In this document: positions 12,921 through 39,290 of the stretch, piece by piece
How positions within the stretch are numbered: position 1 is the stretch's first letter
Layout of the letters: each line of letters opens with the position of its first letter
Source: Octopus sinensis
Taxonomy: Eukaryota
Length of the DNA: 53,267 nucleotides
Direction: 5' to 3'
Assembly: GCF_006345805.1 (NCBI RefSeq)
Contig: NW_021835423.1
Span: 1-53,267 of the forward strand
The notes under the pieces: model-generated
The model's input: only the letters and a program-made list of their open reading frames with translations
Database searches by the model: none
What the model was told of the DNA's origin: nothing
Made by a program: the position numbers and the translations under genes

Positions 12921-12959
12921 GATATAGACATTTATAAAGGTATATATATATATTTTTTT

Positions 12960-13613: not shown

Positions 13614-13647
<34 letters not shown>

Positions 13648-13698
13648 CATACATACGTACATACGTACATACATGCATACATACATACATACATACAT

Positions 13699-13729
<31 letters not shown>

Positions 13730-14227: not shown

Positions 14228-14263
<36 letters not shown>

Positions 14264-14414
14264 TTCATATATACGACAGGCTTCCTTCTGTTTCCGTGAC
14301 AAAGCTTTGGTCGGTCCGTAGGCTATGGTAGAAGACATTTGCCCATGGTGCCACGTAGTGGGATTGAACCCGGAACCATGTGGTTGGTAAGCGAGCTACT
14401 TCCCATACAGACAC
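13380..14414 (-). mobile_element. OK-like tRNA-derived SINE with an internal (CATA)n expansion of about 690 bp
   Basis: Both halves match the copies at 21708, 30665, 44930 and 45460. The head carries B-box ggttcaatccc. Confidence 0.85.
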
Positions 14415-17099: not shown

Positions 17100-17299
17100 T
17101 CACTTTGCGTCTAATGACAGACATTCCATCGCAGCGTCACATTCAGCTTCTTCAAGAGCTGCACGTAATGTTGCGTGTGTCCGTGTTTCTGGGTCGCAAG
17201 TTTTGAACCATTCGTAAAGCATCAGGTAGCCTTGTTTTACAGCGTCAATAGACTCATCATCAATTTTCAGTTTAGTTGTATCAACTCCTAAAACTATCG
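17100..17299 (-). CDS. Terminal exon (200 nt), death domain C-half: (A)IVLGVDTTKLKIDDESIDAVKQGYLMLYEWFKTCDPETRTHATLRAALEEAECDAAMECLSLDAK*
   Basis: Acceptor gtcttttgcag|CG, stop TGA at 17102-17100. Helical death-fold pattern (MLYEW ... ATLRAALEE). Confidence 0.88.
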
Positions 17300-17599
17300 C
17301 TGCAAAAGACACAACAATAAGAAATAAATGCAACAACCTTAACAATATTAACAATAATATAAAAGATGTGTGTTGTTATAAACATAACAAAGAAACTATT
17401 TCAAGAGAGAAATATAAAAAAATAGCTAAGAAACAAGAAAAATATAAGACATTGTTTTCTATTTCTAGGGATGATGAGAAAAATAACAAAGTGGTTAAAT
17501 TAAAGGTGATTTTAAAAAAAACATTAATTGAAGTTTACACTTGAGAATCTTTTAAGGTAAACCGATGGCAGATGTGTTTGTGAAGGCAAAAGTGTATGA

Positions 17600-18340
17600 G
17601 AACCTAAAGAATCAACATAGGGTACCAACAGGCAAACCATTTGATCCATTCATTTCCTCTGCTCAATATTTCTGGGAGAGTTGTAGGGATAGAGACCCCT
17701 GGCATTTCTTCCATTGGGGCCTATCAGATGTAACCATCATTATATATTTTGGTTGGATTCCCAAGCATCAACAACTAAGTCTATGGATATCATCCAACTA
17801 TTTAGTGCTTGGTCTACCCCTGGGTCTCCTACTCCATTGGTTTGACTTTGAGAACCTGTCTTGTAATTCATTCCTGCGACATTCTGATCACATGTCCTAG
17901 GTACCAGAGATGTGAAGAAGTGGCTCAACCTGGAGAGACTCCCAGATCTCTGAACTATACATCCTATTGGGTAACATTACTCCAGAGACCCTTTAGAAGA
18001 ATCCCTTATATCTGTCTTAATCTGGCAGATTTCAGATCTGATACTCAAAGGGTCATGAAAGTAATGTCTCTCTGTGAAATCAATCACCTTGCAAAGTTCC
18101 CAAAATGACACTGAAAATCAAATGAATAATGATAGACCAACAGTCGATTATTCTCAGTCAAATTCAATCCTTTTTGAATCTACTCCAGATTCAATCAATT
18201 CTCCTGAACCCATTCAGTTATTCTTATTTCTCAGTGAGAGAGAGACCAGCCATGGTCTGGCTTCACTTGTGAATATTCATTTTCTGTCAAATTTCCTTAA
18301 AGCCATTCTCTCTTTTTGGATGTGGGGAATATGATATGAT
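17600..18340 (-). mobile_element. RTE-clade LINE 3' remnant
   Basis: GFF*RVSGVMLPNRMYSSEIWESLQVEPL and SRRPRGRPSTK*LDDIHRL. Confidence 0.7.
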
Positions 18341-18440
18341 TTGGCTGTGTCACCCCTATACTAAGTCTGTTTTTACTGAAGCATTTACAAACATATGTCA
18401 TGTGGTAAAGTCATTCCAATATGGCAATATAAAAGAGAGA

Positions 18441-18848
18441 ATACCAAACTAATTCCCTATGGATACCGTATTTATTACAACGAGTGGCTTGTAAACGTAT
18501 CTAACGAGCGAAAGTTAGATACGTTTACAAGCCACTCGTTGTAATAAATACGGTATCCATAGGGAATGAGTTTGGTATTTTATTTATTACACACGAATAA
18601 ACGACCATATTTTATTAACCCAATAACTAAATTTTTCACGTTTAGTTGTTACTTATGAATGACAAAAGTAGTGCCGTCACCGGGACCTCGGGTCATCACC
18701 ATGAATTGACCAATCAGAAGCAGCGCTGTCACCGTTACCTCGGGTCATCACCATGGATTGACCAATCAGAAGCAGCGCTCGCAGTATCTGACATATGTTA
18801 GATACCAAAAATATCTCAAAGTGTTCTCAATCACATGTGTGTAATAAT
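18441..18848. mobile_element. Non-coding element with a 65-bp-arm palindrome, a 52-bp tandem duplication and 11-bp inverted ends
   Basis: Arms 18441-18505 and 18514-18578 with one mismatch. Tandem units 18676-18727 and 18728-18779. ttattacacac/gtgtgtaataa inverted pair. Confidence 0.7.
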
Positions 18849-19205
18849 TGCAATTATCACTTTCAAACACAATAACCCAATCCCTAATGGCTTCAAGAAG
18901 ACCCTAACTCATGGTCTTTTGATGGAGTAAAGACGAACCAAAAACGTTGTCATTAACTCAGCTGTTTACCCTTAACATATTTTTCTTCTTTCTTCCAATA
19001 TTAAATGCTACTTGTATTTTCTTGTGTATCCACAATTACCAACCTCAGTGGATACTTTATGAAATACCAGTAATATCATTAATAGAATTTATTTTGCAGC
19101 TAACCATTCCACTGGAAATTAGGAATGTAACCTGTTCTCTTTCATCCTGACAAGGTGAATGTAAAATTTATAGAAATCAATTAGGTAGTGTAATTTTATA
19201 CTCAC

Positions 19206-19277
19206 CTACTTGCCACCAATCTCTTCCTAACCTCTTAGCCACTCTCAGAAGATCCTTCTCCTTCAGCTCTGGACTCC
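19206..19277 (-). CDS. Exon (72 nt, phase 1-1), death domain N-half: (G)SPELKEKDLLRVAKRLGRDWWQV
   Basis: Acceptor ttatttcag|GG and donor GTAG|gtgagt. The LGRDWWQVA motif joins directly to IVLGV in the terminal exon. Confidence 0.9.
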
Positions 19278-19514
19278 CTGAAATAAATATTTCCAAATTT
19301 TATAATTTATACTAAATTTCTTAATCTTTATTCTTGAGCCATGCTTATCATCAATGGTCAACTGGTGACCACTATGATTTTGGTCAACCTTTTTTAATCT
19401 ATGTAATAGCTCAATATTTTGGTCCACAACAAAATAGATTATACTTCTTAAACTTCGTCTCTCTATCAAGACATCCTACATAATCTAACAATGTTGTATT
19501 TATCACATTTAATT

Positions 19515-20694
19515 AGTTAGTTAGTTAATTGGTTCAAATCAATAGCAAGTCATGTAGGGGACATGGAGTTAAGTACAGGTGTGTTCATGTAAAGGTTCGG
19601 CCATTGAGGTCAAGAGAGGCTTTGAACAAAGCGGTCGTCGTCATCTTCACCATCTCGTCTGGCAGCTGTTCAAGGATCCGCAACCCGGACGGAGAAGCTC
19701 CTCTCGATTGAGATGAATCGTCGCAGGTAGAGCTTTTCGGAATGGCAGCCGACACTACTGGAGCAGTGTGAAGAATTTCGAGAGTTTTCGTTATGTGTGT
19801 CGAGAAGAATACCAGGTCGTCTAGGGGGACATGGAGTTAAGTACAGGTGGTGTTCATGTAAGAGCAGGCCACTGAGCTCAAGGGAGGCAAAGCGGTCGTC
19901 GGCATCTTCACCATCTCGTCTGGCAGCTTGTTCCACGGATCCGCAACCCGGACGGAGAAAGCCCCTCTCCTTCGATTGAGATGAAATCGTCATAGATAGA
20001 GCTTTTCGAATGACCCCGCAGCCACACTCTGGAGCAGGAGTGAAGAACAGCTCTTTCGAGAGGTTACACTTTCCGCTTATGATGTTGTGGGCGAGAATGA
20101 GATCACCACGGCGGCGGCGTTTTTCAAGAGAATAAAGGTCGAGCGTCCTCAGCCTTTCTTCGTAGGACAAATTTTTGAGACCATGAACCATGCGGGTAGC
20201 CAGCTTCTGGACTCTTTCGAGATGCTGTATGTCTTTGAGGAGATAGGGAGAAGAGGCTTGAATCCCGTACTCCAATATGGGTCTCACCAGCGTGACATAG
20301 AGTGGTAGGAATATGGCTGCTGTGAGCATTCCGAATGACCGTCGAATCAAGAACAGAATTCCGCGTGCTTTGTTGGCAGCATGGACGCACTGGGCCGAAG
20401 GCGAAAAGGAGGAATCCACCAAGATACCCAGGTCCTTTACCTGATCGGTCCTTTCCAGCAGCAGATGATGACCCGTCCGAAATCAAGTTGAGTTGCAGGA
20501 GGAGAGCCAACAGGCAGATGACAGCACTTTGACACGTTCAGACACAGGTCCCATTCGTTAGACCACTTCCAAATTTGGTGGAGGCATCGACGAAGATCCT
20601 CTATATCACCGCGAGGAGCGACCAGTTTGATATCGTCGGCAAATAGAAGGGTGTGTTGCGTGAGGTCGTCGGGCAAGTCATTTATGAAGACCAG
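19515..20694 (-). mobile_element. 5'-truncated CR1-group LINE with a duplicated 3' end, inserted in module copy 1
   Basis: LFADDIKL, LYVTLVRPILEYG, LERVQKLATRMV, LSYEERL, RRRGDLI. Junctions are defined by the uninterrupted module copy 2. Confidence 0.88.
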
Positions 20695-21049
20695 TTGATA
20701 AGACTATTTTTCTCACAGTTCTCTATTTCCCTTCTTATATCTGTACCAAACCTGTGACATGACTTCACTCACCAACATTTTTCTCATCTTCTGCTTAATT
20801 CTAATGTCAACCAAGGTGGTTTCCAAAGACCTAACCACAAATACACGGCAGACAAATTCATGTAGGATAAACATACACCTGACATCTTTGTGAAGGGTTG
20901 ATGTTGGTAATCTTGAATCGTAACTCCGCACATCCCAGTTCACAAGAACATCATCTGATTCAGGAAATATTTTAAGACTCCTTAATAACGAAGTTCTTTA
21001 AAACCCTTTATTCCCCAAAGGTTTGGCTTATCTATTGCTCATAAGATGT

Positions 21050-22900
21050 CTTCTTTTTGTGCTATTATCTCGATGCCTCTACTCTTGTGGGACAATGAGG
21101 TAGTGTACCATCACCCTAAACAGTTTCTCTTTAACCTTTGACATGCTTTCTTCTGCTACTTTGAATTTCACTTATTTTTCTGCTGAGCTTTGGCAAATGA
21201 CGGCAACATTTATTTGCCTTCAACCCTATTCTTGACCAACTAATTAATAAATACAGTCTATTCAGAACTATTTGCATATCCTTTTGCTCTGTTGTTTGTG
21301 TTGTTATGTCATCCATTAATGTCGTCTTAGGGGACTTCACTCGAGTTATTTCTTCTGATCAATCTGCTGATCTAATAAACATTTCCATAACAAGTACAAA
21401 CAAAATGACTGATATTGTGCAACCCACGGCAATTCCAGTCTCCAGACGATGCGAGTCTGTTGTGAAATATTCTGTCCTGAAGCGCATTTTGAAATTATTA
21501 CAGCAACTCTTCATTAGATTCTTAATCTTTTCTCGTATATAAAAGACGTCCGTTGTTTTCAGCAACAATTCGTGTAGTACAGAACGATATCATTATTAAC
21601 CTGATCAAGCCATACAACATTCAAATCGCTTTTGTTCTTCTTTGTATCTTGTATCGCATCCCAGATTCAAAATGCAAGTTCCACACATTCAGGGATTCCT
21701 GCCTTCTCTCTCTTTACTCTTTACTCTTTTATTTGTTTCAGTGAGCTGACTGTGGCCATGCTGGAGCACCGCTTTTAGTCGAGCATATCAACCCCAGGAC
21801 TTATTCTTTGTAAGCCTGGTACTTATTCTATTGGTCTCTTTTCTCGAACAAATAAGTTACGGGGACGGTTGTCAAGTGAGGCTGGGGGAACAAACACAGA
21901 CACACAAACATATACACATACATACATATGTATATATATGCGACGGGTTTATTTCAGTTTCCGTCTACCAAATCCACTCACAAGGCCTTGGTCGGCCCGA
22001 GGCTATAGTAGAAGACACTTGCCCAAGGTGCCACGCAGTGGGACATTAACCCGGAACCATGTGGTTTGTAAGCAAGCTACTTACCACACAGCCACTCGGA
22101 CGCCTTCTGGATACTTTCCGTCCCATAACCATTATTTTGGAGATATGTAGTTGATCTCTTAGCAAGTACACCCATGTAAATCTTGCCATCTTCGTTCACG
22201 GTTGGAATTGTTCTGAACTGGTCGGTCGATTTTCCTTTAGCTCCCTTTGATAAGTAAACTCCTTTTACCTTGCATCAGCCATCCAGTTCACCTTTATATC
22301 ACAACTTCCAAAGTAGTAGGTAATACTTATAACACAATTGGGTATAATGCTTGTACACTTTCCATAGTACACCATCCCCTCCTGGGGCACTCTTTGCTCT
22401 TGTCCTCTTCCCTCAGCTATATACTTGCTTCTTACTGAAATCCCCAAGCTGAAATATTTGATTGCTGGTTTCCTTGGTAATTTCAAACTGTCCATGAGTG
22501 GGAATGTTTGATTTCACTTTGTGTCAGTGTAGGACGCCCGTGTCAACCCGTCTCTTTGCATCTTTATTGCATTTTAGCTTTCCACTCTTAGTATCTGCAA
22601 ACTGTTTATGAGTAACCTCATATGGGTTCTTAGCAAGCTGCTCTCCATACCCTTTACTATCCTTTCCTGTTTCAACATGTCTCATATTTCTTTGAATAAG
22701 TTGAAAAGGAACGCTTAATTTTTTTGAGGACATGACAATCTTTCTAGAACATGTGCCACAATAAAATGCACCCAGGACCCTTTATAAAGAGGTCGATGTT
22801 AAGAAGGGCATACCACCATAGAAAGGCTGAAATATTTTAGTGAGATGTGTTCCTCAACAAATGAAGTTGGGCAGTAATTCTCAATAAGAACTGACTTGGA
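21050..22900 (-). mobile_element. Degenerate HERO-like (R2 group) LINE RT fragment
   Basis: GIAVGCTISVILFVLVME, LMDDIT, KAGIPECVE, KSDLNVVWLD and DGKIYMGVLAKR. Confidence 0.7.
21708..22101 (-). mobile_element. OK-like SINE inserted in the HERO fragment with a 7-bp TSD
   Basis: gccttct at 21701-21707 and 22102-22108. Removing the SINE restores the HERO reading KAGIP. Confidence 0.88.
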
Positions 22901-23461
22901 CAGTGACCACCCATGGGAATATGGAAATCATAAATGATGAAGGTCATATCATTGCATTGTATCTTCAAGCGAGAAAGAGAAACAAGGGTTGTTTCATCAA
23001 GAAAGCAAAGTCTTCTGCTTGGATAAAGACAATGTTTAGTGGATGTAATGATAGATTTAGTATCAGTGAAAAACGACAGGGTGTTCACACTTGGAAGGTA
23101 TTTCATAGTAATTCTGCCACATTATGAAAAGCATCTACCTAAACAACCACAATAATAAACAGAAAAAATCATAATTTCCTCACTTGTTTACACTTAAACT
23201 ACATCACTAGTTTCCTGTGGAAATGATAAAATTAACTCTGTTGTGCCTTTTTAATCCATTATTACCAACTGTGCTTACCTCGATGGATATTTCATGACCT
23301 TTCAGTAATATCCATATCTTTAATACAATTATTTTGCAGCTAATCTTTCAATTTGAAAGTAAGAATATAACCTGTTTTCAGTTATTCTTTCAAGCACAAT
23401 ATGCCCAGGGTAAGTAAACTTTATAGAAATCAATTGGGAACTGTTATTTTATAGTCAGCAC

Positions 23462-23530
23462 CTTGCTTGGATGTAGCCCCTAATAACTGTGCATCTGATT
23501 GAACTCCTTTGTCCTCAAACTTTGGAGACA
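23462..23530 (-). CDS. Candidate symmetric exon (69 nt, phase 1-1): (V)SPKFEDKGVQSDAQLLGATSKQ; may be skipped or a pseudo-exon
   Basis: Acceptor ctctttcag|TG. The ancestral donor position reads ctgact, but a weak CAAG|gtgctg donor 3 nt upstream keeps the frame. Homologous to exon 19206..19277. Confidence 0.5.
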
Positions 23531-23551
23531 CTGAAAGAGATATTTCAAGGT

Positions 23552-23751
23552 AAAGTATACTAGCCATCTCAATATGGCTAACCACTAAGGGTGGCTGTTA
23601 CTGTAGCTTGTAGCCCCAGGAGATCATCGTCTCCAGCTGGCTTTAGGCACACTTTCTGTGCCCTTATGATATTTGCAAAGGGAGGTCATCCCTCTCTCGT
23701 CAACCTAAGTGATACGCACGGACTGCAGTTTCTAGGTATTTGCCTGTCTTC
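23552..23751. mobile_element. 200-bp insertion with a 13-bp TSD next to the copy-2 exon acceptor
   Basis: gatatttcaaggt at 23539-23551 and 23752-23764. The insertion is absent from the other module copies. Confidence 0.75.
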
Positions 23752-25139
23752 GATATTTCAAGGTTTTACATTTAATCGTATTTCTTTATTATAAATAAAC
23801 TATATTCTTTTATTGTTAGACATTTCTATCACCATGGTCAACTGGTGACACTCTGGGTTTGGTCAAGATTTTTATACTCTCTACAGTGACCCCATGTAAT
23901 AACTCAGTATTTACGTCCACAACGAAATTGACTGACCGTCCTAAATCTCCACTATCTATTAAGACATCATACATAATCTAACAATGTTACCTTTATTTCA
24001 TTTAATTATCACTTGATAAAACTGTTTCCCCTTAGTTCTGTCTTTCTTTTCTTCTATCCGTGTCCAATCTATGACATATCATTGTTGTCTCACTTCTAGA
24101 TTTCACTAACCAACATTCGTCTCATCTTCTGCTTAATTGTAAAGTCAGGGAAGTTGGTCATCAAAGATCTAACCACAGACACAACAGACAACTTCAAGTA
24201 GGATAAACATACAACTCCTCTCTTTGTTAAACGTTGCTGCTGGTAATCATTAATTTTAACTATCTGCATCACAGTTTAACAGGATGTCAAGTGAAATATT
24301 TGAAAACTCCCTAAAAAATGAATTTTTTTAATGGTGAGCAATGAATAGTTTTACACAGGTGGAACGGAAAGTGATATCAGGTGTTCTAAAAGACATCACC
24401 TCATTAACAACTTATAAGAAACTGTTCATCCATATATTATTACAGTGAAAATAACTGAAATGATATACCTGAACAGGTTTTCAAGAAAATAGGGTATCTC
24501 TGTTGACCCTATTTTATACAGCAGTCAAAGTTTACCCACTCATTTGATGTTTCCTCTATGACTGTGGTGGACGTCCATGGTTTGAAAACCCAGTCACAAG
24601 TAAATTTGAGAACACAAAAGTTACACCATTAAATGACAGAGACTGTCTTTCAGATGCCAATATAAGAAGAACATTACGAGGAACATGTAACTCTACTTAC
24701 ATCCCACACCATCAACACTACTATGCCATTTGTCCCTTATGCTAATTAAGATTAACTAATTAAAAAAGGTCATTATCATGCTTTATGAAATAGATTTAAT
24801 TAGTGTCGCATATATAAAAAATATATGTTTCACAACATACTGTTTGTGATACGGATGAAAGCAGAACAATAACATCTGAACTTTACTGGACGTTGGATGT
24901 CAATAATCCCAAATTGTAGGGATATGGTCCAATACCCAAGAAAACAATAGAAATCCATAGAGGGCGCACAATGTAAAATCTTAGATGAGGGCAGAAGATG
25001 ATGCTATGACAAAATAAGGTTACATTTCAGAGATAAAAGCATTGAGTACTGGTGTGGACGTAATCACCTTACCCACTGCCCCAAACTGGCCGGCATTAAG
25101 CTAACGTTTCAAATCAGTTTTCTTATACATATTAAAGCG

Positions 25140-25345
25140 GGGAACTGGCAGAATCGTTAGCACATTGCCCCAAATGCTTAGAGGCATTTCTTGAGGTTTA
25201 ATGTTCTGAGTTCGAATTCTGCCTTGGTTGACTTTGCTTTCATCCTTTAAGGGCGGATAAAATAAGCAGCAGTTGAGCACTGGGGGTGATTAAATCGAAA
25301 TACCCCCTACATCGAGCTCTCTGGCCTTGTGTCAAAACTTTAAAA
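25140..25345 (+). mobile_element. tRNA-derived SINE
   Basis: gcagaatcgttag and B-box gagttcgaattc. Confidence 0.65.
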
Positions 25346-25559
25346 TCAATATTCTTATACCGAGTTTATAATATTTTTTTGTTGTTTTATGACCCCAATA
25401 TGTATTCAAATCAGAGATGTTCTTGGTAGATACCCCCAGTGAGAAGCAACATGTTACGACAAATATCTCACTAGGCAACAACAACAACAACAACAATAAC
25501 CTATCGGGAAACAGCCCAGGACTTGGGAGAGAAAGAAAGAAAAACTTTCTCATCAACTC

Positions 25560-25632
25560 ACCTAAGGTGCCACCCACGTGGGACTGAACCGGAACCATGT
25601 GGTCGGTAAGCAAGCTACTTACCACACAGACA
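25560..25632 (-). mobile_element. OK-like SINE head fragment
   Basis: Matches the tRNA-like head of the other copies. Confidence 0.65.
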
Positions 25633-26019
25633 CTCTTTAATAGAATTACTTTACAGTTAAACTTTCAAAAACGCAATTTTTTTTACATTATTGAGAGACA
25701 TTCCTATCAGCAATGGTCAATTGGTAACCATTATGATTTTGGTCAACATTTTTCTAGTTTCTGTTCACCTGTTTACCCCTACACAACAACATATCTTAGT
25801 TCTTGGTTCCAAAAGACAATATTAACTCTATTGTGTTTTCTAATTTATCCATTTTTCCATCCAAGGCAACAAAGATTTTATGAAATTTCAGCGATATATT
25901 TCATCGACTCCTTTTGCAGCTAACATTTCAAATGAGATTAGAGATGGCCCTGTTCTCAGTCCTTCTGACAAAAAAAACAGCTCAGGGAGTGGAGAATTTA
26001 TAGGAATCAGTTAGGTACA

Positions 26020-26303
26020 TTGATTTCTATAAATTTTTCCATCGCTTGTGTTTTATGGAAACGAATTGGTCATAGCAAGTGGAGGCGCAGGGCTTAATGG
26101 TTAGGGTATTTGACTCATGATTGTAAGATTGGGGTTTCGATTCCTTCACCAGGCAATACGTTGTGTTCTTGAGCAAAACACTTCCGTTCACTCAGCTGGC
26201 AAAAATAAGTAATCTTACAGCGAACTAGTGTCCTGTTCAGGGAGGAATGTATACGCTAGAGAAACCGGGAAACCAACCCTATGCCTCTTATGGGATAACA
26301 TAA
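26020..26303 (+). mobile_element. SINE insertion with a 9-bp TSD in module copy 3
   Basis: ttaggtaca at 26011-26019 and 26304-26312. The SINE head starts at about 26081. Confidence 0.7.
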
Positions 26304-26328
26304 TTAGGTACAGTTATTTCATACTCAC

Positions 26329-26379
26329 CAACTGGTCCTGCCACCATCTGGACTTCCATCTTTGACGAATTTGGACCAA
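26329..26379 (-). CDS. Symmetric exon (51 nt, phase 1-1): (V)GPNSSKMEVQMVAGPV; diverged copy of the first death-domain exon
   Basis: Acceptor atttttcag|TT and donor GTTG|gtgagt. Open frame. Aligns without gaps to the first 40 nt of exon 19206..19277, then has a 21-nt in-frame deletion. Confidence 0.72.
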
Positions 26380-26810
26380 CTGAAAAATACATTTCAAAGT
26401 GGTTTTAGTAAAATTTCTTTATCCTTTCTAATAATCGATATTTTATTATTGTGAGACATTCGTGTCATCACTGATGACAACATGCTTTTGGAGAACATTT
26501 GTATGCTTTCTACAGTGGGGCCAAGAAATGGTTCACTATTTGAGTCCACAACAGAATAGACCACACTTAACAACCCTTCTCTGTCTCTTAAGTCATCCAA
26601 CAATTCTAACAATTCTGAAATTATCTCATTTAATTATCCCCTAATAACCGATTTTCTCTTAGCTTCGTTTGGGTTTTCTTATGTTTGTGCCAGATCTATG
26701 ACAAGACATCTCTAATCAACATTCGTCTCATCTTCTGCTTAATTCCAGTGTCAACCAAGTTGAGCATCGAAGTCCTAGCCTCAAACACGACACACCACTT
26801 CCAGACGGAT

Positions 26811-27420
26811 ATATATCTATATCTATACTTGTTTTGCAAGATTTTTGATGTGAAATGGTGTGTTGAAACAGATATTGTTGTATTTAGGAATGGTCATTTT
26901 GCCAGTTAGCCAATAAAAACACACGCACTATATATTTAGTGTTACTTTGCTTCAGCGTTATTTATTTTTTTACTTAATCTTATTTTCGGCCAGAGTTCTT
27001 TCGTCACACTCCTGTGACCTCATCAGTGGTCCTTTGCTTTCTTCTTTCTTATTTGTTGTCTCTCTCCTTACTAACCATCAGCCGTTTTGTATTTTGTATT
27101 CCTATTGTACGTGTCCTCATTTGTGCATGCGTATACCTCTATGTGTGTCTATGTTTAGTTAGTGTGTGTGGGGGTTGAAGTGCCTGTAATATTTGTATCT
27201 CCTGTTTATATACGTACGTGTAATTTGTTTTTGTTTTTGGCCGAAATAAGATTAAGATTAATGTAAAAAAATAAATAAGACTGAATCAAAGTAACACCAA
27301 ATATGTAGTGCGTGTGTTTTTATTGGCTAAACTGGCAAAATGACCATTCCCAAATACAATATATCTATCTATCTATCTATCTATCTATTTATTTATCTCT
27401 CTCTCTCTATATATATATAT
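26811..27420. mobile_element. Penelope-like non-coding remnant with inverted arms of about 115 bp, inserted in module copy 3
   Basis: Arms 26878-26992 and 27238-27360. Carries a minimal hammerhead motif. Absent from copies 1 and 2. Confidence 0.65.
26988..27032 (-). ncRNA. Minimal type I hammerhead ribozyme motif (Penelope type)
   Basis: ggacca-CTGATGA-g-GTCACA ggag TGTGAC-GAAA-gaac-TC-tggcc: complete core, 6-bp stem II and a short stem I. Confidence 0.65.
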
Positions 27421-28239
27421 ATACCTGCTCTCTTTGTTATTGGTTACTACTAGTAATCTTTAATCTTAATTACCCACATCACAGTTCTCCAGAATGTAAT
27501 CAGATTTGGGGAGATATCTGAAGATATTTCAATGTCATTCATCCTCCTGAATAAAGCAGGTCGAACAGAAAGTGACATCAGGTCTAACAGGAAGTGATAT
27601 CTCGTGTCCTAAATTAACACACTACATTCACACAAAACCTCATTAACGACATAAAACTTGTCGTCCACACATTATTGCTGTGAAAATATTTGAAACGGTT
27701 CAGAAGAACTGATACTCGGGAATACTAATCTATACATCAATCAAAGTTTCCCCACCCTTTTGATGTCCCCTCTCAAATGTTGGCACCTAAACCTTCAGTT
27801 GAGATTTTCTTATTGAGTCTCTTATTTTATAAAAGCTCACTTTGATATTCATATAAATGCAGTTGTTTTTAATTATCAGCTTCCGAAGATATTGATAAAT
27901 CATTAATAACTCTAATCACACACAAGATGTCGGTATTTACTGATAGAACCTTGGTGATTTATTGGTATTTAGTCACCATTTATAATTCAGTATTCTTTAT
28001 TATTTATATTGTGGCAGAAAGTAACCATCTTGAAGTGTGACAAGTCTTCTAATTGGACAAGAACAATGTTTAGTGGGAGTAGTGAGAGACATAATATGAC
28101 AGAGAAAAGACACCTGGAACATCTTTTATCAAAAGTGTGCTTGATTAAGTCAGAACTGGATCTACACAACAACATGAAATACAATATTCCACACCATAAA
28201 CCCCATGAGACAAACAGACAGATCATACAGTATTCTTAC

Positions 28240-28382
28240 CCAAATTATTTTTGCTCGTTATATTCTGTCCACACATATGGCATCGTTTAGGTATCTTTTG
28301 GGGACAGCATTTCTTACACAGCGAAAGATGTTTACATGGAAAGAACGTCTCTGTGGCCACTTCGTCTTCACAAAACATACAT
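28240..28382 (-). CDS. Exon (143 nt), RING-HC finger: CMFCEDEVATETFFPCKHLSLCKKCCPQKIPKRCHMCGQNITSKNNL
   Basis: Acceptor ttgttcctcag|A and donor TTGG|gtaaga. Spacing C-x2-C-x11-C-x-H-x3-C-x2-C-x8-C-x2-C, the C3HC4 type seen in Mind bomb and IAP RINGs. Confidence 0.92.
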
Positions 28383-28824
28383 CTGAGGAACAAAAACCTG
28401 AACACATCCCATTAATAACATTCATTTATAACAAATATTACATTGCGTGCATATTTACAGTAGAGAATATTATGCGAGACCACAATTAAACAATTACATA
28501 TGGGCGAATTTGTGAGTATATAAATGCAGACACAGACACACAGACACAGACACAGATACGCACACACACACACACACATACACACACATATATATATATA
28601 TAAATGGACACAAATATTAATAAGTATATGTCATGACATTGATACATCACAAAAACTGATTTACGCAAAGTGAACAACATATATTCCAGAAATATAATTC
28701 ACTTATGTATATATATGTGTGTGTGTGTGCGTGTGTGTGTGTGTGTGTCCGAGTCAGTCGCCATGATAGATTGTTAGCCGCTACACACATTTTTTACTCT
28801 CCTTGTTTTTTTTTTTCCGTGTCC

Positions 28825-28860
28825 CTTTCTGTAGAAGAGCGAAGGCTCGAAATGTAAAAG
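28825..28860 (+). ncRNA. Degenerate minimal hammerhead motif
   Basis: cttt-CTGTAGA-a-GAGC gaag GCTC-GAAA-tg-TA-aaag. Stems I and II are intact, but core A6 is changed to T. Confidence 0.4.
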
Positions 28861-28930
28861 ACTTTTTCTATTCCTTCAACACCACCTGTCATCGTCTTTT
28901 GTTTTTTTCGTAAACTCTCCCTATATATAT

Positions 28931-30574
<1,644 letters not shown>

Positions 30575-30577
30575 TAT

Positions 30578-30659
<82 letters not shown>

Positions 30660-30664
30660 TTCTC

Positions 30665-31070
30665 TTTTTTCTCTTTTTACTTGTCTCAGTCATTTTGACT
30701 GCGGCCATGCTGGTGGACCGCCTTTAATCGAGTAACACGACCCCGGGACTTATTCTTTGTAAGCCCAGTACTTATTCTATCGGTCTCTTTTGCCGAACCG
30801 CTAAGTGACGGGGACATAAACACACCAGCATTGGTTGTCAAGCAATGCTAGGGGGACAAACACAGACACACAAACTTACACACACATACATATATATACA
30901 TATATACGACGGGCTTCTTTCAGTTTCCGTCTACCAAATCCACTCACAAGGCTTTGGTCGACCCAAGGCTATAGTAGAAGACACTTGCCCAAGGTGCCAC
31001 ACAGTGGGACTGAACCCGGAACCATGTGGTTGGTAAACAAGCTTCTTACCACACAGCCACTCCTGCGCCT
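30665..31070 (-). mobile_element. OK-like SINE
   Basis: Matches the other copies end to end. Confidence 0.88.
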
Positions 31071-31071
31071 A

Positions 31072-31116
<45 letters not shown>

Positions 31117-31609
31117 ATCTATGTATGCATGTATAAATACGTATGTATGTATATATGTATCCATGTATGTACACTCATTGTATGTGTTTGTAGGCGATTT
31201 TCTCAGGATAGCTCACATGGACATGACTGGGTGGGACAGAGAAGACAGAGGAACAATCTGTTGGTAGACAGATAAATTCCATCACTTCACTATTTACTTC
31301 TACATTTTCTCATTGGTCCCAAATCTTTAAAATAGGGAATTGAGAGAGGTGGGTGGGGATTTTAGGAGAGGTATAACAGTGAACGCAACCAATCATTTGA
31401 ATGTAATCAAAATAGTGTCCTTTCTTTTAATTAGCTTAACATCTGCATATTGTTTATTTTTCTTCTTGCTGTTGTTGTCTAACCTTTCATTAAGCTACTA
31501 AGACAGTATAATGTATCAGTAGAATTAAAACAATATAAACATATAAACATGGTTATATACAAAATAGAAAATGTAATGGTTTATCTTGTCATTGCCAGTG
31601 AATACTTAC

Positions 31610-31785
31610 TGCGGTGGGAATAACATATTTAACGTCTTTTTTAAATTTTCCTTTTCTATTAGGTCCAATGGTGTTCTGCCAATTTTGTTTTTACAGTAAA
31701 AGTTGGCCCCGTGGTGGGCTAGGTAGCTGGCAACTACCACACCAGAGCACCTTTCTTCGTTTCCCAGTTTCAGCTCTACGCAGAA
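31610..31785 (-). CDS. Exon (176 nt), last ankyrin-like repeat: FCVELKLGNEERCSGVVVASYLAHHGANFYCKNKIGRTPLDLIEKENLKKTLNMLFPP(Q)
   Basis: Acceptor catcatttgtag|TTC and donor CCGCA|gtaagt. GRTPLDL motif. Phase 0-2. Confidence 0.9.
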
Positions 31786-32289
31786 CTACAAATGATGAAA
31801 TATAAAATGATGAGTTAAAGATTACACAAACATATACTAAAGATGCCCCAAATTACACAACAGTTCAACTACATTTACACATAGTTTGTTTCTCCAGTGA
31901 TTAAACTATTCACACAGCGTTGATTTCTTACATCATCTCTTAGTTGAGTCCACTTTTCATTATCATTTGTTTTACTTTACGTTCTACATTAAGACAAAAA
32001 TTATGATCATATATTGAACAAAACGCACATTAGTGGTCAACGTTATTGCTTAACAATGATATTTAATGAGTAAATATTTACTTGCCAATCACAAATGTCA
32101 CAAACTATTCAATAAAAACACAATATAAAGTTATTATAACATCAAGTCAAATATACAAAATATAAGGACAGAAATGTCACAATAATGAAAGACAACAAAC
32201 CAACAAGAACCTATCTCTACAACTGGCTTGATAAAGCCAAATGGCCATAGCAAGAGAAAAACTTACGGAAGAGTATTGTACATATAAGT

Positions 32290-33430
32290 ACTAGCTTAAG
32301 GTGACCCGCTCTACGCGTGGGTGAGGGTGTGATTGTTACTTTCTGTTGCTTCCTTTGTTTCTTATCGCCATATTCACCCTCTTTGTTCCTCTCTCCTTTC
32401 TCTCTCACTTCCTCACTCTCTTACTCTTCCTTTATCTCGGACTCTCCCTCACTTTCTCTTGCTTTTTATCTTTCTCTATCTCTCTATCTCCCATTTATGA
32501 AAAATTAGATTTCCGTGCTTAAATTACAAATCTTCTACTTTACCATGTTGAAAATTTGATTGAAATCAGGCAAAAGGTGTCCAATCTGAACCCCCAATTG
32601 TCCCCCAAAATCAATAAAATCCCTATTTTCACACCAAAACGACCACAGTCGCGCCCCAAAAGTCTCTCAAACAATTTCTCACCGCAAGTTACCCCCTCTT
32701 TTAAATTGTAATCCCCTTCCAGGCCCAATTACACATCTTTTTACATAAAAATCCAATTTGTATCATCGTTCGCCTTCTTCATTTGATAGATTAGAAATAC
32801 ATACCCGGTCTTGTTCGGGATTAAAATAGTTTATTATTGTTTTACTAGTTTTGGTATAATAACCCGATTTCATTCGGGTCTAAACGGGCCACATTTTAAA
32901 AGATGAGGGATTTTGCCCTAGAGTCCATGCCTTTCAATTGAGCAAATTCGAAGTTCCAATACAAACTCGCTAGCACTTTTAACATAGGTGTGTTTATTTT
33001 TAGCACAATCCAACCACATATGTACACAGTATATATATAAATTAACACAATATATCTGTTTAATAATATCTGTTATGATTGTGCGATGGAGGTGGGCGAT
33101 ATTAATTCACTGTTCTAAAAGACCTGTGGCGAGAATATTTAAACTTTTGCGGTTGTCATCGCTTTCTGTCTATAGATACAGACAGATGTACAGTGAGAGA
33201 GGTGGTGGAAGAAAGAGTGACAGAGAGACGTCGTTATAGAGGGATCAAAAAATCACTCTTTTTGCCATAGCAACCACATCTTATAGCTTGCGAATTTTAA
33301 CCATCGCGGGTCTCATTCTCACCACGCATTTAGTATCCTTGCCAATTTGCAGCTCGATCCTTGCCTCGGTTTGGCTGCCATTAACCTCCAAAGCAAAATG
33401 TGCATAAAATTTTCGTCAAAGGACTGTTTT
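32290..33430. mobile_element. Possible non-autonomous Helitron/Helentron-type remnants
   Basis: Starts actagc with a short hairpin (cccgc tctac gcgtggg) and has an internal CT-rich tract. Classification is from recall only. Confidence 0.3.
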
Positions 33431-33629
33431 ATAGATATGAATAACACCACAAATAATATAAGTTATACCAGAAAAGAGAACAGCAACAACATAGCAAGGC
33501 CTTCAGACATAACAACTAAATCAACACCACATAGACATATCCACGCAGATCAATAATGTTTCTATAATTAAGTGGATTGGAGAGAAAAACAGGGTATATA
33601 AGGCATCGGATTTTGTGCGCGAGAGAGAA

Positions 33630-34175
33630 GTCTACCATGGTATGATTATGTGATGCATATGGATGAAGATAGCTTCATCAAGAAGGGGTGATCTCTCATT
33701 GTGGAGGGAATGTGTGGAGGGGGTAGACCCAGAAAGACGTGCAATAATGTGGTGAGAAAGGACCGTCAGACGTTGGGTCTCACAGAGGGGATGAAATGGG
33801 AGCGATACTTTTGGCAGTCTGCTGTACTTGAGATAATATGCCAAGCTAAGTCGTCGTTGTCCTTGCATACTGTCATGACCCCTGTATCATTCTTCGTCTG
33901 AGATATCCTAATCTTGAGGGATCATGGGTGCTGATGCTTCGGAAAAATCACCCATGCTGGTGTCACATACAAATATCCGTGTCGGTGCTGCAGAAAAGCA
34001 CGCAGTACATTATGTAAATTGGGTGGCATTAGGAAGGACGTCCAACTGTCGAAACCATGCGAAAAGAGATATGGAGCCCAGGTAGCTTTTCAGCTGACCA
34101 GCTTCTGTCAAAGCGTCGAACCCATAACAGCTTTGAAAACAGTCGATACATTATCATGATGATGATGATGATGAA
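33630..34175 (+). mobile_element. RTE-clade LINE 3' end with a (GAT)n tail
   Basis: VEGMCGGGRPRKTCNNVVRKDRQTLGLTE; similar to 37830-38510. Confidence 0.75.
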
Positions 34176-34429
34176 TTAATAAGGAAACATCTTTTGATGA
34201 AGAAAGTGAAGTAAGGGAAGTAAGAATCGGTGTCACAGTTGAGGCAGAACACCAACGCATAGTTGATAAATTGTTCAGTGTTAGTCTGATGGACTATTCC
34301 AGTGGGTGGGGAGGTCGCTGGCTGCCAGAGTAGGTTCCTCTCACCAAAGTAGACATTACAACAATACACAGATGACCATCAACTGCCTGAATAGTAGTCA
34401 GTCATCTGTAGTGAGCTTTATTCATATGG

Positions 34430-34765
34430 GAATAGCCCAATGTCATAATTCAAAACTAACGCAGCGAAAATTTTGAAAAGTTCCCCCAGTTCTGAAAAAA
34501 ATCGATAAATTCGACATGGGGTCGAGAATCTAAACTTTTTATATGCAACACATCTTCTGTCTAGAGGACGCAACTCGACCTTTTTATCGCCCAAAGGGAC
34601 AGCTAGGAACATCGTATACACAGAAGTATTCGAGTGAAGAGAAGATATTGCAACCTACACATGCGCCTTCGTTCCCAAGAGGGAAAGGACTAGATTGGGA
34701 CTAGTCGTTGCCTACTAGGGGCTCTTACATACCCAGGCAATGCCGGGCTATGATGCTAGTATTAT
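34430..34765. mobile_element. Possible Helitron/Helentron-type remnant
   Basis: Ends cccaggcaatgccgggc...gctagta (hairpin plus CTAG). Confidence 0.3.
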
Positions 34766-35218
34766 ATAAAAGAAATGTGACAGAGAGCTGTTTCAGGCAG
34801 AATTCTTCATGGAATGGACAAGATGTATTTATTATCATGGCACCAGCACTATAAATGTTACTGTCTATCATATGAACCTCTCTTCTACCCAGTATCATTG
34901 TTAATTCAGAATAATATCTCCTGTCTTGAATAGATCATTTCTCCTTCAAATTTTGATGACCGTGTTTGTATGGCCAACATTCGAGATGGATCACCTTCTC
35001 TACCATGGAGAGGTCGTGCCTTTGAGGACGGAAGGGGACGGAATAGAGAATAGTGTTTGTTACATAATAATATAACTAAGGGTTACCATTGTGACTGGAT
35101 CAGGAAATGGTAATGGAGGATGGGGTTGGTAGGTGAGAATTGCGATACAAACAATGTCTGTTTCTGTCTGTCTTTCTCTGTCTGTTTGTCTATTTTACAC
35201 CCACACAGACGCACAAAT

Positions 35219-35306
<88 letters not shown>

Positions 35307-35322
35307 CACACACACACACACA
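35219..35322. repeat. (CA)n microsatellite
   Basis: Direct reading. Confidence 0.95.
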
Positions 35323-35350
35323 CATAGTCACAAACAATGTGAAAACTTAC

Positions 35351-35563
35351 CTGATCTAACATGGTCATGTGCTCCACCTCAGAATGAAAGTTGTTTTCTG
35401 TTTCTAACGCCAGATGCAGGCAATTATTTCCTCCATGTTCGACAACATTTACATTCGTGCCCCTGGCTATCAGCCGCTGCATTATTCCGAGGTGACCGTC
35501 CGAAACAGCTTCAAGCAATGGTGTCCTATATTCTTTGTTCACAATTTCTAAATTCACCGAATC
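35351..35563 (-). CDS. Exon (213 nt), ankyrin repeats: DSVNLEIVNKEYRTPLLEAVSDGHLGIMQRLIARGTNVNVVEHGGNNCLHLALETENNFHSEVEHMTMLDQ
   Basis: Acceptor ctccacaaag|GAT and donor CAG|gtaagt. Ankyrin motifs TPLLEAV and CLHLAL. Confidence 0.92.
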
Positions 35564-35991
35564 CTTTGTGGAGGTAAAAATGGAAAATGAAAATTTACAT
35601 GAAAATCAGGGTTGATATCAATGTCATTACAGTTTTCTACGGGTACTAGATCAAACTGATCAAATACATTTGATGTTTGCCAGTGAAATAAATATTCCAT
35701 AAGGACCTTCTATAACCTGATACATGTGTGTGTTAGAGACATGATAAACATATTAAGATGTCCTACGTTTGCCCCTCTATAGTAAGTTGTAGGGCAACAG
35801 AACTAGAGTAAACACATGATTAGCAGATCAAGTCAAGTAAAGAAGAATTATGATTTCTAATGTTTACTTTTGACGTTGCTACATTAATAAGGGGTTCATA
35901 AAACTGCTGAGCCGGTTAGCGTCCACATGCATAAAACTAATGCGCACGCACGCACACACACATAAACATCAGTGTTACATATATAAATACA

Positions 35992-36452
35992 TATAATGAA
36001 TTGGGGAAACGGAGTTCACGAGAATATGCATCACAACGACCGTTTCGACCCATCTTGCATCGGTCGCTTGCGGGTGGGCTACTATACAACGTGTTGTGTT
36101 GCATCCTCCAGTGCAGATGCATCTCATCGGGTGCCTTGTTTTAATGTAAAGATACCTCACTAAATATATTCAGTTTCACTTGACATGTTGTTGCTAGGAG
36201 CTTCTTGGATTACAACATGAGAGACAACAGCCTCCTGGCAACAACAACATTCCAAGCGAAACCGAATATATTTACAGAGGTATCTTCTTTAAAAGAAGAC
36301 ACCCGATGACATGCATCTGCACCGAAGGATGTCCCACAACCAGTTATACAATATCCTACCTGCAAGGGCCCGATGCAAGATGGATTGAAACAATCGTTGT
36401 GATGAATAAAAATTCTCATTAACTCCATTTTCTGCTTCCCTCATTCATTATA
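35992..36452. repeat. Imperfect long inverted repeat (fold-back), arms of about 210 bp
   Basis: Colinear matching blocks: catcacaacga, ccatcttgcatcgg, gtgcagatgcat, tcatcgggtg, aagatacctc, taaatatattc. Loop about 36204-36225. Confidence 0.85.
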
Positions 36453-36624
36453 AACTGAACGAACACTGCAGAATACATGAAGTAGATCCAGTGTCACTTA
36501 TAGCTCAACTGTGGATGACATGAGGTAACCGAATCAGCGAAAGATCTTTAAGCGTCATACTTCTAAATGTATACACAAATTCCAAATATTTACAAATACA
36601 CACGCACACACACACACACATACA

Positions 36625-38515: not shown

Positions 38516-38578
38516 ATAACGCACAAATAGAGACATAGACATACACAAATATGAAAGTAACAATCAAAACTATCATTG

Positions 38579-38614
<36 letters not shown>

Positions 38615-38704
38615 GTGTATATTTAGGGCTAAAAACCACTATGTGGACAGCCATATGCTAGAAGAAGATCACATACGATCTAACCATAAATCCATTCATC
38701 TCCA

Positions 38705-39290
<586 letters not shown>

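What the first reader, a model, noticed from the sequence alone, without database searches (positions are those of the whole stretch)
18950..27790. Triplicated exon module: the RING-to-death-domain linker is built from recycled death-domain exons
Seen: three colinear, strongly diverged copies of an intron-exon-intron unit, each with a phase 1-1 exon at the same position (72, 69 and 51 nt): SPELKEKDLLRVAKRLGRDWWQV, SPKFEDKGVQSDAQLLGATSKQ and GPNSSKMEVQMVA-------GPV. All stay open and are multiples of three, while each copy's introns took different TE insertions. Inference: tandem exon duplication followed by conversion into a linker, with symmetric exons allowing up to four linker lengths by skipping. 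Variable module number among paralogues would make this a modular diversification system.
Basis: partly seen in the sequence, partly recalled or inferred. Interest (0 to 1): 0.85.

Follow-up and report, generated by a model that had tools for sequence, protein, structure and literature searches.

The report
Octopus linker built from duplicated death-domain exon
In an Octopus sinensis gene for an ankyrin–RING–death-domain protein, the flexible spacer between the RING and the death domain is encoded by old tandem copies of the death domain's first exon; it is a clear, already annotated but undescribed example of an ordinary process (tandem exon duplication), in a family of over 100 genes with 0 to 4 such spacer exons.

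Summary
On the minus strand lie three colinear, diverged copies of an intron–exon–intron unit. Flank identity is 67–76% (blastn 90–144 bits; at most 37 bits in 200 shuffles). Each copy carries a phase 1-1 exon: C 51 nt, B 72 nt, A 72 nt. Exon A is the first exon of a real death domain.

The correction concerns B. Its homologous GT donor is mutated to CT in this window. B also carries a stop or frameshifts in two close paralogues.

The window is Octopus sinensis. RefSeq already annotates RING-C-B-A-DD (isoforms X1, X3) and RING-C-A-DD (X2). AlphaFold gives low confidence only for the residues encoded by C and B.

Module number varies. Annotated proteins of three Octopus species have 0–4 linker exons. 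Genomic arrays also hold dead and exon-less modules. Recombination between two dispersed-repeat copies removes the B unit in close paralogues.

Linker exons diverge as fast as their introns or faster, whereas exon A is conserved. I read this as birth-and-death tandem exon duplication producing a disordered, splice-variable spacer. It is a new member of a known kind. A role in "diversification" is unproven, and I had no transcript reads.

The parts
17100..49253 (-). Whole coding region of the gene, in 11 coding exons. RefSeq names it 'putative ankyrin repeat protein RF_0381 / MIB2-like' (isoforms X1-X3). Architecture: ankyrin repeats, one C3HC4 RING, a linker, then a death domain.
   Evidence: P0018/P0001/P0017 map to the window.
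28240..28382 (-). RING (zf-C3HC4_3) exon, 143 nt, with a phase-1 donor.
   Evidence: Pfam E 4e-8. Splice sites were read.
25870..27790 (-). Module C: the upstream flank, exon C and the downstream flank. It is interrupted by two transposable elements.
   Evidence: Colinear blastn hits to modules B and A. Alignment.
26329..26379 (-). Exon C, 51 nt, phase 1-1, with AG and GTGAGT intact. It encodes (V)GPNSSKMEVQMVAGPV and is included in all three RefSeq isoforms of this gene.
   Evidence: It is identical in five or more close paralogues.
26812..27412 (-). Dispersed foldback/MITE-like element inserted in the upstream flank of module C. Its inverted arms are 26870-26982 and 27253-27366.
   Evidence: One search shows the inverted repeat (91%). 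One search found 4057 first-look candidates genome-wide at 84-93% identity.
26046..26290 (-). SINE-like dispersed repeat inserted about 40 nt downstream of exon C.
   Evidence: 3741 candidates, with 75-81% identity on many chromosomes.
25634..25762 (-). Exon-less remnant of a fourth module. An upstream-flank piece is joined to a downstream-flank piece, and about 210 nt including the exon are deleted.
   Evidence: 19336-19394 matches 25695-25753 at 86%, and 23317-23351 matches 25634-25668. The same remnant is in paralogues. Similar remnants occur in O. bimaculoides.
25561..25635 (-). Upstream copy of a dispersed SINE-like repeat. It is one breakpoint of the presence/absence of the B unit.
23270..24557 (-). 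Module B: the upstream flank, exon B and the downstream flank.
   Evidence: In the flank-only tree it groups with the 78-nt 'APKFEDRCVQTEATCQELGAASQAI' modules of distant paralogues (support 98/95).
23459..23530 (-). Exon B, 72 nt to the homologous donor position, phase 1-1 and open. It encodes (V)SPKFEDKGVQSDAQLLGATSKQG. The donor here is CTGACT, so the GT is lost. B is included in RefSeq X1/X3 and skipped in X2.
   Evidence: Paralogue L016 has a stop codon plus the CT donor. L018 has two 1-nt deletions with an intact GTGAGT donor.
23546..23752 (-). Young high-copy SINE inserted about 16-21 nt upstream of the exon B acceptor.
   Evidence: 2394 candidates, with 94-98% identity across all chromosomes.
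22022..22097 (-). Downstream copy of the same dispersed repeat. It is the second breakpoint of the roughly 3.5-kb B unit.
   Evidence: B-less paralogue L013 equals the window with 25563..22098 removed; 88% identical to 25561-25635; the window holds six copies of this repeat in all.
19030..21001 (-). Module A: the upstream flank (split by a LINE fragment), exon A and the downstream flank.
19516..20691 (-). LINE reverse-transcriptase fragment inserted in the upstream flank of module A. It is absent from paralogue C11434.
   Evidence: RVT_1 E 4e-6. The gap appears in the L013 alignment.
19206..19277 (-). Exon A, 72 nt, phase 1-1. It is the first death-domain exon and encodes (G)SPELKEKDLLRVAKRLGRDWWQV, which forms helix 1 and the start of helix 2.
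   Evidence: Pfam Death profile positions 3-82 span A plus the last exon. The family profile hits RIPK1 and ankyrin-3 death domains at E 2e-8. AlphaFold predicts a helix at 364-385 with pLDDT about 87. The exon is 93% identical to its O. bimaculoides counterpart, against 81-82% for the flanks.
17100..17299 (-). Terminal coding exon with the rest of the death domain and the stop codon. Its acceptor is phase 1.
   Evidence: There are at least 125 related copies in the genome.

Best explanation
The window holds one member of a large, so far Octopus-only family (at least 125 death-domain terminal exons in this genome). The proteins have ankyrin repeats, one C3HC4 RING, a linker and a C-terminal death domain.

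The linker is encoded by a tandem array of genomic modules of about 1-2 kb. Each module is an old duplicate of the unit that carries the first death-domain exon. That exon is symmetric (phase 1-1) and its length is a multiple of three. The RING donor and the last-exon acceptor are also phase 1. Any new copy could therefore be spliced in, or skipped, without breaking the frame.

A lone copy of helix 1 cannot fold. The copies lost the helix-1 signature, most of them by a 21-nt deletion that leaves 51 nt. They now encode a charged, disordered spacer.

The arrays evolve by birth and death. Unequal recombination, here between two dispersed-repeat copies, adds or removes units. Splice-site mutations and small deletions kill others.

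In this gene, exon C is a used linker exon. Exon B is a decaying or weakly spliced cassette. Exon A is the real death-domain exon.

Shown: the homology, the phases, the variation in array size, the annotated isoforms and the predicted disorder. Inferred: the direction of change (death-domain exon to linker), the recombination mechanism, actual splicing in vivo, and any effect of linker length on the geometry between the RING and death-domain assemblies.
For: - Homologous flanks and shuffle control.
- Phases and splice sites.
- Exon-level homology through intermediates: win_A against L027_m1 is 32/51 identical (a hand count of 33/51 gives binomial p about 3e-7). The O. bimaculoides m2 peptide retains AKR.
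- Exon A is part of a real death domain.
- RefSeq isoforms on this contig: X1/X3 with C+B, X2 with C only.
- Cassette patterns in paralogues.
- 0-4 modules per protein in three species.
- Dead and exon-less modules.
- The B unit is bounded by same-orientation repeat copies and is absent from L013.
- Modules cluster by type across paralogues.
- AlphaFold with a 35-sequence alignment gives pLDDT below 50 only at residues 318-358; exons C and B encode 317-357.
- Family size.
Against: - I could inspect no RNA reads. The isoforms are RefSeq/Gnomon models. With paralogues 95-99% identical, reads may be assigned to the wrong copy.
- X1/X3 need a non-canonical CT donor for B at this locus.
- B carries a stop in C12886 and frameshifts in C9611.
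- Several close copies of the whole gene are pseudogenes.
- Linker exons show no purifying selection on sequence. The A-B exon is 50% identical against 75% for the flanks (p 6e-5). B against the 78-nt class is 68-71% against 83-84%. They could be tolerated passengers rather than selected parts.
- Homologues were found only in Octopus, so the ancestral state without modules was not observed.
Confidence: 0.8

Rival explanations
1. B and C are non-functional pseudo-exons. On this view they are relics of a segmental duplication inside the RING-to-death-domain intron. They would appear in gene models only because they happen to be open and have splice-like sites. The real protein would join the RING directly to exon A.
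For: - B has lost its GT donor here, carries a stop in L016 and is frameshifted in L018.
- The arrays contain many dead and exon-less modules.
- Linker exons evolve no more slowly than introns.
- A RING-to-A isoform is annotated for a paralogue (P0026).
Against: - Exon C keeps a perfect acceptor and a GTGAGT donor. It is in all three RefSeq isoforms here and in many paralogue models.
- Modules of the same types are open, 3n in length and annotated as coding in O. bimaculoides and O. vulgaris, despite about 25-30% flank divergence.
- In L028 the annotated protein (P0035) contains exactly the two modules with intact GT donors and omits the two whose donors are mutated.
- From my own knowledge, Gnomon calls extra isoforms only with transcript support.
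Confidence: 0.12
2. The array is a selected diversification device. Combinatorial or mutually exclusive inclusion of fast-evolving linker exons, together with variation in array size among more than 100 paralogues, would generate functionally distinct adaptors. The differences could lie in RING-to-death-domain spacing or in the number of short motifs, perhaps for innate immune or cell-death signalling.
For: - Linker exons diverge faster than their flanks in two comparisons (p 6e-5 and 0.008).
- A recurring K-x-V-Q-T-x-A-E core appears across modules and species.
- One paralogue has three isoforms that each use a different 78-nt module (P0030/32/37).
- Flanks near the exons are conserved, which is typical of regulated cassette exons.
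- There is a precedent that linker length between death-fold domains changes assembly: ASC against ASCb (PMC8891976, abstract).
Against: - There is no expression, interaction or functional data.
- Faster exon divergence may partly reflect constrained flanks or relaxed constraint plus alignment choice.
- The exons are too short for a sound dN/dS test. L027_m2 against L028_m2 is not significant (p 0.15).
- Many modules, and many whole genes, are decaying.
Confidence: 0.08

Closest known systems
Internal tandem duplication of symmetric exons that encode disordered, alternatively spliced regions (Schad, Kalmar & Tompa 2013, PMC3632108)
   Same: The exons are phase-symmetric (1-1), arose by tandem duplication, encode a region predicted to be disordered, and are annotated as cassette exons.
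   Different: The source exon is a piece of a folded domain (death-domain helix 1), not an already disordered module. The case lies in an octopus-specific multigene family, with clear birth and death of units.
Titin PEVK exon arrays (my own knowledge)
   Same: Many short exons that preserve the reading frame were made by tandem duplication. They encode a P/E/V/K-rich unstructured spacer whose length is set by exon number and exon skipping. Example peptides here are EGPKSSKPEVQMLAEPP and VNRTFEVKETQTLAEPV.
   Different: I tested no sequence relationship. Here there are only 0-4 units, the protein is a signalling protein rather than a spring, and the origin from a death-domain exon is traceable.
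Tandem duplicated exon substitutions, that is mutually exclusive exons (PMC9741552, PMC8373072)
   Same: Adjacent homologous exons of the same phase, with homologous flanks.
   Different: In this gene the copies are co-included (X1: C+B+A) and have lost the parental function, rather than being swapped one for one. Only one paralogue (isoforms X6/X7/X8) looks substitution-like.
COE/EBF duplicated helix exon (PMC2394523)
   Same: Duplication of an exon that encodes a single helix of a helical domain, with the extra copy kept in the mature protein.
   Different: In COE the extra helix remains part of the domain. Here the copies degenerate into a spacer.
MIB2 / mind bomb E3 ligases (the RefSeq name for most family members)
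   Same: An ankyrin-repeat block followed by a C3HC4_3-type RING.
   Different: There are no MIB/HERC2 or ZZ domains, only one RING, and a C-terminal death domain. By architecture it is not a MIB2 orthologue.
ASC/ASCb linker isoforms of a death-fold adaptor (PMC8891976)
   Same: Alternative splicing changes the length of the linker next to a death-fold domain. This gives a plausible way for linker length to matter.
   Different: The domains (PYD-CARD) and the lineage are different. The resemblance is functional analogy only and was not tested here.

Membership tests
Tandem exon duplication | Neighbouring exons of one gene are homologous, together with their flanking intron sequence. | tested here: met
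   Colinear flank similarity of 67-76%, E 1e-14 to 1e-36. Shuffle control. Global alignment. Exon-level identity through intermediates.
Tandem exon duplication | The copies keep the reading frame: same phase class and a length that is a multiple of three. | tested here: met
   C is 51 nt, B 72 nt (or 69 with the cryptic donor) and A 72 nt. All are phase 1-1, and the neighbouring exons are phase 1.
Tandem exon duplication | The copies are used in mature transcripts. | tested here: inconclusive
   RefSeq isoforms include C (X1-X3) and B (X1, X3). I could read no transcript data, and B lacks a canonical donor here.
Mutually exclusive duplicated exons | Exactly one of the homologous exons is present in each transcript. 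| tested here: not met
   X1/X3 contain C, B and A together. Only the paralogue isoforms P0030/32/37 look like one-of-three choices.
Death domain (PF00531, death-fold superfamily) | Sequence match to the death-domain profile over the whole domain, including the part encoded by exon A. | tested here: met
   A single sequence is sub-threshold (19.6 and 17.4 bits against a cut-off of 22.6). Paralogue P0006 passes at 34.4 bits. The family profile hits ankyrin-3, RIPK1, PIDD, Fas, TRADD, CRADD and FADD death domains, best E 2e-8, profile positions 3-84.
Death domain (PF00531, death-fold superfamily) | A compact bundle of six helices. | tested here: inconclusive
   AlphaFold predicts helices at 364-385, 401-415, 423-432 and 436-443 with pLDDT about 83-89. 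I did not compare the model with solved death domains by fold search.
MIB2 (mind bomb 2) E3 ligase | N-terminal MIB/HERC2 domains and a ZZ zinc finger. | tested here: not met
   Pfam on P0018, P0009 and P0006 finds only ankyrin, zf-C3HC4_3 and Death domains. The precomputed domain lists agree.
MIB2 (mind bomb 2) E3 ligase | Ankyrin repeats followed by C-terminal RING finger(s). | tested here: met
   Ankyrin repeats at residues about 15-265 and one zf-C3HC4_3 at 269-312.
Intrinsically disordered linker | No predicted stable structure between two folded domains. | tested here: met
   The AlphaFold model built from 35 sequences has pLDDT below 50 only at residues 318-358, with no secondary structure there. 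Exons C and B encode 317-357. This is a prediction only.

The most novel reading that the evidence does not exclude
The family of more than 100 Octopus ankyrin-RING-death-domain genes may use arrays of fast-evolving cassette exons derived from the death domain as a tunable spacer or motif array. Copy-number change by recombination, plus combinatorial splicing, would then produce a graded repertoire of E3/death-domain adaptors. That would be a lineage-specific way of diversifying cell-death or innate-immune signalling.
Probability: 0.12. Interest if true: 0.65.

Novelty: new member of a known kind. Interest (0 to 1): 0.4.

Why it matters
This is an unusually legible example of how a fragment of a folded domain can be recycled into a disordered linker. 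The steps are tandem duplication of a symmetric exon, then decay of the fold signature, with copy number changing by repeat-mediated recombination. All stages are visible side by side across paralogues and species: intact, weakened, dead and exon-less modules.

It also flags a large, undescribed Octopus-specific family that couples a RING E3 module to a death domain. RefSeq names these genes misleadingly as MIB2-like or RF_0381. The family could matter for cephalopod cell-death or immune signalling.

For annotation, it shows that isoform models in this family need long-read support, because at least one annotated junction requires a non-canonical donor.

Tried and rejected
- The idea that the shared flanks are a transposable element. 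Rejected: genome-wide hits of module A cover the exon plus both flanks, and every such locus I examined belongs to the gene family. The real inserted elements give thousands of dispersed hits.
- Fetching 20-kb stretches of 16 paralogues. Several arrays are therefore seen only in part, and the A-type exons of L025, L026 and L028 lie just outside the loci.
- Looking for independent transcript-derived proteins. Both short and padded protein searches returned only NCBI/UniRef Octopus models.
- The O. bimaculoides locus of P0009 was not on record. P0013 worked.
- The single-sequence AlphaFold model was too poor to use for the C-terminus. It was replaced by the alignment-based model.
- A three-way MAFFT alignment misplaced the short exon C, so I made no exon-identity claim for C from it.
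- A first shuffle script timed out.
- Some exon coordinates in the table were off (L029_m2, L025_m). Those rows were ignored.
- A formal dN/dS test was not attempted, because exons of 51-78 nt give no power.
- Four literature searches for this family found nothing specific.
Full report
**What is there**

Read in the direction of transcription, the order is C, B, A. Exon C is 26379..26329 (51 nt). Exon B is 23530..23459 (72 nt to the homologous donor position). Exon A is 19277..19206 (72 nt).

Upstream lies a C3HC4 RING exon at 28382..28240 (Pfam zf-C3HC4_3, E 4e-8). Downstream lies the terminal coding exon at 17299..17100. The RING donor, both ends of C, B and A, and the terminal acceptor are all phase 1. 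Every inclusion or skipping pattern therefore stays in frame.

Exon A plus the terminal exon match the Pfam Death profile over positions 3-82. The single-sequence score is sub-threshold (19.6 bits). A profile built from 11 family members hits solved death domains: ankyrin-3 (E 2.2e-8), RIPK1 (2.4e-8, profile 3-84), PIDD, Fas, TRADD, CRADD and FADD. Exon A is thus a real first exon of a death domain.

**Is the triplication real?**

Yes. A self-comparison of 16-30 kb gives colinear same-strand matches:
- A-B: 19042-19213 with 23277-23466, 19327-19515 with 23809-24008, and 20761-21001 with 24099-24331.
- B-C: 23780-24205 with 26413-26811, plus three further blocks up to 27773.
- A-C: four blocks.

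Identity is 67-76% and E values run from 1e-14 to 1e-36. The best scores are 144, 90 and 137 bits, against at most 37 bits in 200 shuffles. In a global alignment with the inserted SINE removed, the A and B flanks are 75% (upstream) and 74% (downstream) identical.

The similarity is not caused by a transposable element. Genome-wide matches to module A span the exon and both flanks, and the loci I examined all belong to the gene family. The elements that interrupt the modules behave differently. Each gives thousands of dispersed first-look candidates:
- a young SINE at 23546-23752, 16-21 nt upstream of exon B;
- a SINE-like element at 26046-26290;
- a foldback element at 26812-27412;
- a LINE reverse-transcriptase fragment at 19516-20691 (RVT_1), which is absent from paralogue L013.

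A fourth module, without an exon, lies at 25634-25762.

**Correction to the observation**

The donor of B at the position homologous to the GTGAGT of A and C reads CTGACT in this window and in paralogue C12886. Paralogue C9611 still has GTGAGT.

RefSeq isoforms X1 and X3 read ..TSKQG|GSPELK. That is a 72-nt exon B, which at this locus implies a non-canonical donor. In C12886 exon B also carries a stop codon. In C9611 it has two 1-nt deletions and is 70 nt long. B is therefore weakened or decaying in three of the copies I could read.

**Identity of the gene and existing annotation**

The window is a whole unplaced scaffold of Octopus sinensis. The coding region runs from 49253 to 17100 in 11 coding exons. 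The protein has ankyrin repeats, one RING, a linker and a death domain. It has no MIB/HERC2 or ZZ domain, so the RefSeq names 'MIB2-like' and 'RF_0381' are misleading.

RefSeq has three isoforms on this contig:
- X1 (XP_036355888.1) and X3: RING-C-B-A-death domain.
- X2 (XP_029657163.2): RING-C-A-death domain.

Exon C is thus in all models, and B is a cassette. I could not inspect the transcript evidence behind these models. With paralogues 95-99% identical, reads could be assigned to the wrong copy.

**The family and its arrays**

The genome holds at least 125 copies of the terminal death-domain exon. About 44 of them are at least 79% identical in protein to this one, and most are open. Several close copies are pseudogenes.

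In annotated proteins of O. sinensis, O. vulgaris and O. bimaculoides, the stretch between the RING exon and the A-type exon holds 0, 1, 2, 3 or 4 short units. Some units are 17 residues long, for example ARPIFEDKEVQTVEEPR, EGPKSSKPEVQMLAEPP and VNRTFEVKETQTLAEPV. Others are 24-26 residues long, for example EAPKFEDRCVQTEATCQELGAASQAI.

Isoforms of single genes differ by whole units:
- P0024 against P0026: C skipped.
- P0028 against P0029: two units.
- P0031 against P0036: one unit.
- P0030, P0032 and P0037: three different 78-nt units used singly.
- P0048: the A-type exon itself skipped.

At the DNA level, distant paralogues on C27 and C29 carry four to five modules with the same flanks. These include intact exons of 51 and 78 nt. 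They also include exons that are open but have mutated donors (ATGAGT, CTGAGT), and a 48-nt unit with a lost acceptor that three paralogues share. The protein annotated at the C27 locus contains exactly the two units with intact donors.

The O. bimaculoides locus L029 has the RING exon, a remnant, a 51-nt exon, a second 51-nt exon, an exon-less remnant, a 72-nt A-type exon and the terminal exon. A tree built from flanks alone groups modules by type across paralogues: B class 98/95, first-module class 90/92, dead class 100/100. Its backbone is unresolved. The array is therefore old and family-wide, not a private event of this gene.

**Gain and loss of units**

Close paralogues differ in C-to-A spacing: 2.6, 3.5, 4.5 or 6-7 kb. 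The B-less copy L013 aligns to the window at 95% up to 25564 and resumes at 22097. A 72-nt stretch matches both places. Those two places are same-orientation copies of a dispersed SINE-like repeat, which occurs six times in the window. I infer that unequal recombination between these repeats removed the 3.5-kb B unit, or less probably added it. B is about 25% diverged from A in its flanks, far more than the 3-5% between these paralogues, so B is older than the paralogue expansion.

**Direction and fate of the copies**

Exon A is constrained. It is 93% identical to its O. bimaculoides counterpart, against 81-82% for the flanks (p 0.018).

The linker exons are not constrained in the same way:
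- A against B: 50% in the exon, 75% in the flanks (p 6e-5).
- B against the 78-nt class: 68-71% in the exon, 83-84% in the downstream flank (p 0.008 and 0.035).
- A 51-nt pair across species: 75% in the exon, 71-72% in the flanks.

Homology inside the exons is still visible. The 51-nt exon SPKFEEKGVQTVAETV is 32/51 identical to the first 51 nt of A. The O. bimaculoides unit NPNFEEKQRETMAKRV keeps the AKR of helix 1. The donor and the downstream intron of the 51-nt exons align with those of A, so the shorter length is best explained by an internal 21-nt deletion.

An AlphaFold model built from a 35-sequence alignment has mean pLDDT 80.8. Its only segment below 50 is residues 318-358, without secondary structure. 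Exons C and B encode residues 317-357. Exon A starts the first helix (364-385, pLDDT about 87).

Together this supports the reading that copies of a death-domain exon became a disordered spacer. It does not show that the spacer sequence is under selection.

**Comparison with what is known**

Tandem duplication of symmetric exons that encode disordered, alternatively spliced regions is an established pattern (Schad et al. 2013, PMC3632108). From my own knowledge, titin PEVK arrays are the classic length-tunable example. Mutually exclusive duplicated exons (PMC9741552) are a different outcome and do not fit this gene, since C, B and A are co-included. A duplicated single-helix exon kept in the protein is known from COE factors (PMC2394523, abstract). 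Linker length next to death-fold domains alters assembly in ASC against ASCb (PMC8891976, abstract), which gives a plausible but untested role.

Searches for this Octopus family in the literature found nothing. Homologues were found only in Octopus, within the limited sensitivity of the tool.

**Verdict**

It is unproven as a 'diversification system'. This is a new, well-resolved member of a known kind. Interest is moderate.

Noticed in passing
window 23458-23462 (minus strand): RefSeq isoforms X1/X3 of this gene read ..TSKQG|GSPELK. This needs exon B to end at 23459, where the intron starts CT rather than GT. The models may rest on reads from near-identical paralogues that still have GTGAGT.
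   Followed up: partly
L003/L024 (C12510), L022 (C4:164.8 Mb), L005 (C11434): Several copies 95-97% identical to this gene have a broken terminal death-domain exon: a frameshift in C12510, a TAG in the C4 copy and a TAA in C11434. Part of the recent expansion is therefore pseudogenes.
   Followed up: partly
L019 (C5:115.47 Mb) against window 26290-26811 and 31609-31785: Similarity is mosaic. Module C is 98% identical in DNA, but the ankyrin exon upstream is only 55% identical in protein and the RING 81%. This suggests recombination or gene conversion between distant family members.
   Followed up: no
window 9511-11815 (+ strand): A GC-rich (about 52%) non-LTR retrotransposon with long open frames that look like an endonuclease followed by a reverse transcriptase. 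It lies downstream of the gene. I did not run it against Pfam.
   Followed up: no
window 12650-14330, 28520-29110, 38650-40060 and the strongly skewed 38-53 kb: Long microsatellite and simple-repeat tracts (TATG/CA-type; a TC-rich array of about 1.4 kb that reads 'SIYLSIYL') and extreme GC/AT skew. They lie inside the introns of the ankyrin part of the gene.
   Followed up: no
window 18434-18845: A roughly 410-nt insertion with a near-perfect palindrome (18440-18579, 94%) in the intron between exon A and the last exon. It is absent from paralogue L013 and is probably a small foldback element.
   Followed up: partly
paralogue proteins P0015, P0050 (O. sinensis): Some family members replace the death domain by a serine-rich C-terminus with repeated EHSTxSxVxGASTDSG(L/F)xSxSGVDxSE units after one to three linker modules. 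This is an alternative 3' end, or a different domain partner for the same linker array.
   Followed up: no
paralogue protein P0048 (contig of 55,470 bp): An annotated isoform skips the A-type exon itself. The linker unit is joined directly to the last exon, giving a death domain without helix 1. The real death-domain exon therefore also behaves as a cassette in the models.
   Followed up: no
linker peptides across: A core K-x-(E/G)-V-Q-T-x-A-E recurs in many linker units of all three species. Some units have V-Q-(S/T)-D, including exon B here (GVQSDA). It could be a short linear motif or only shared ancestry. I did not test it.
   Followed up: no
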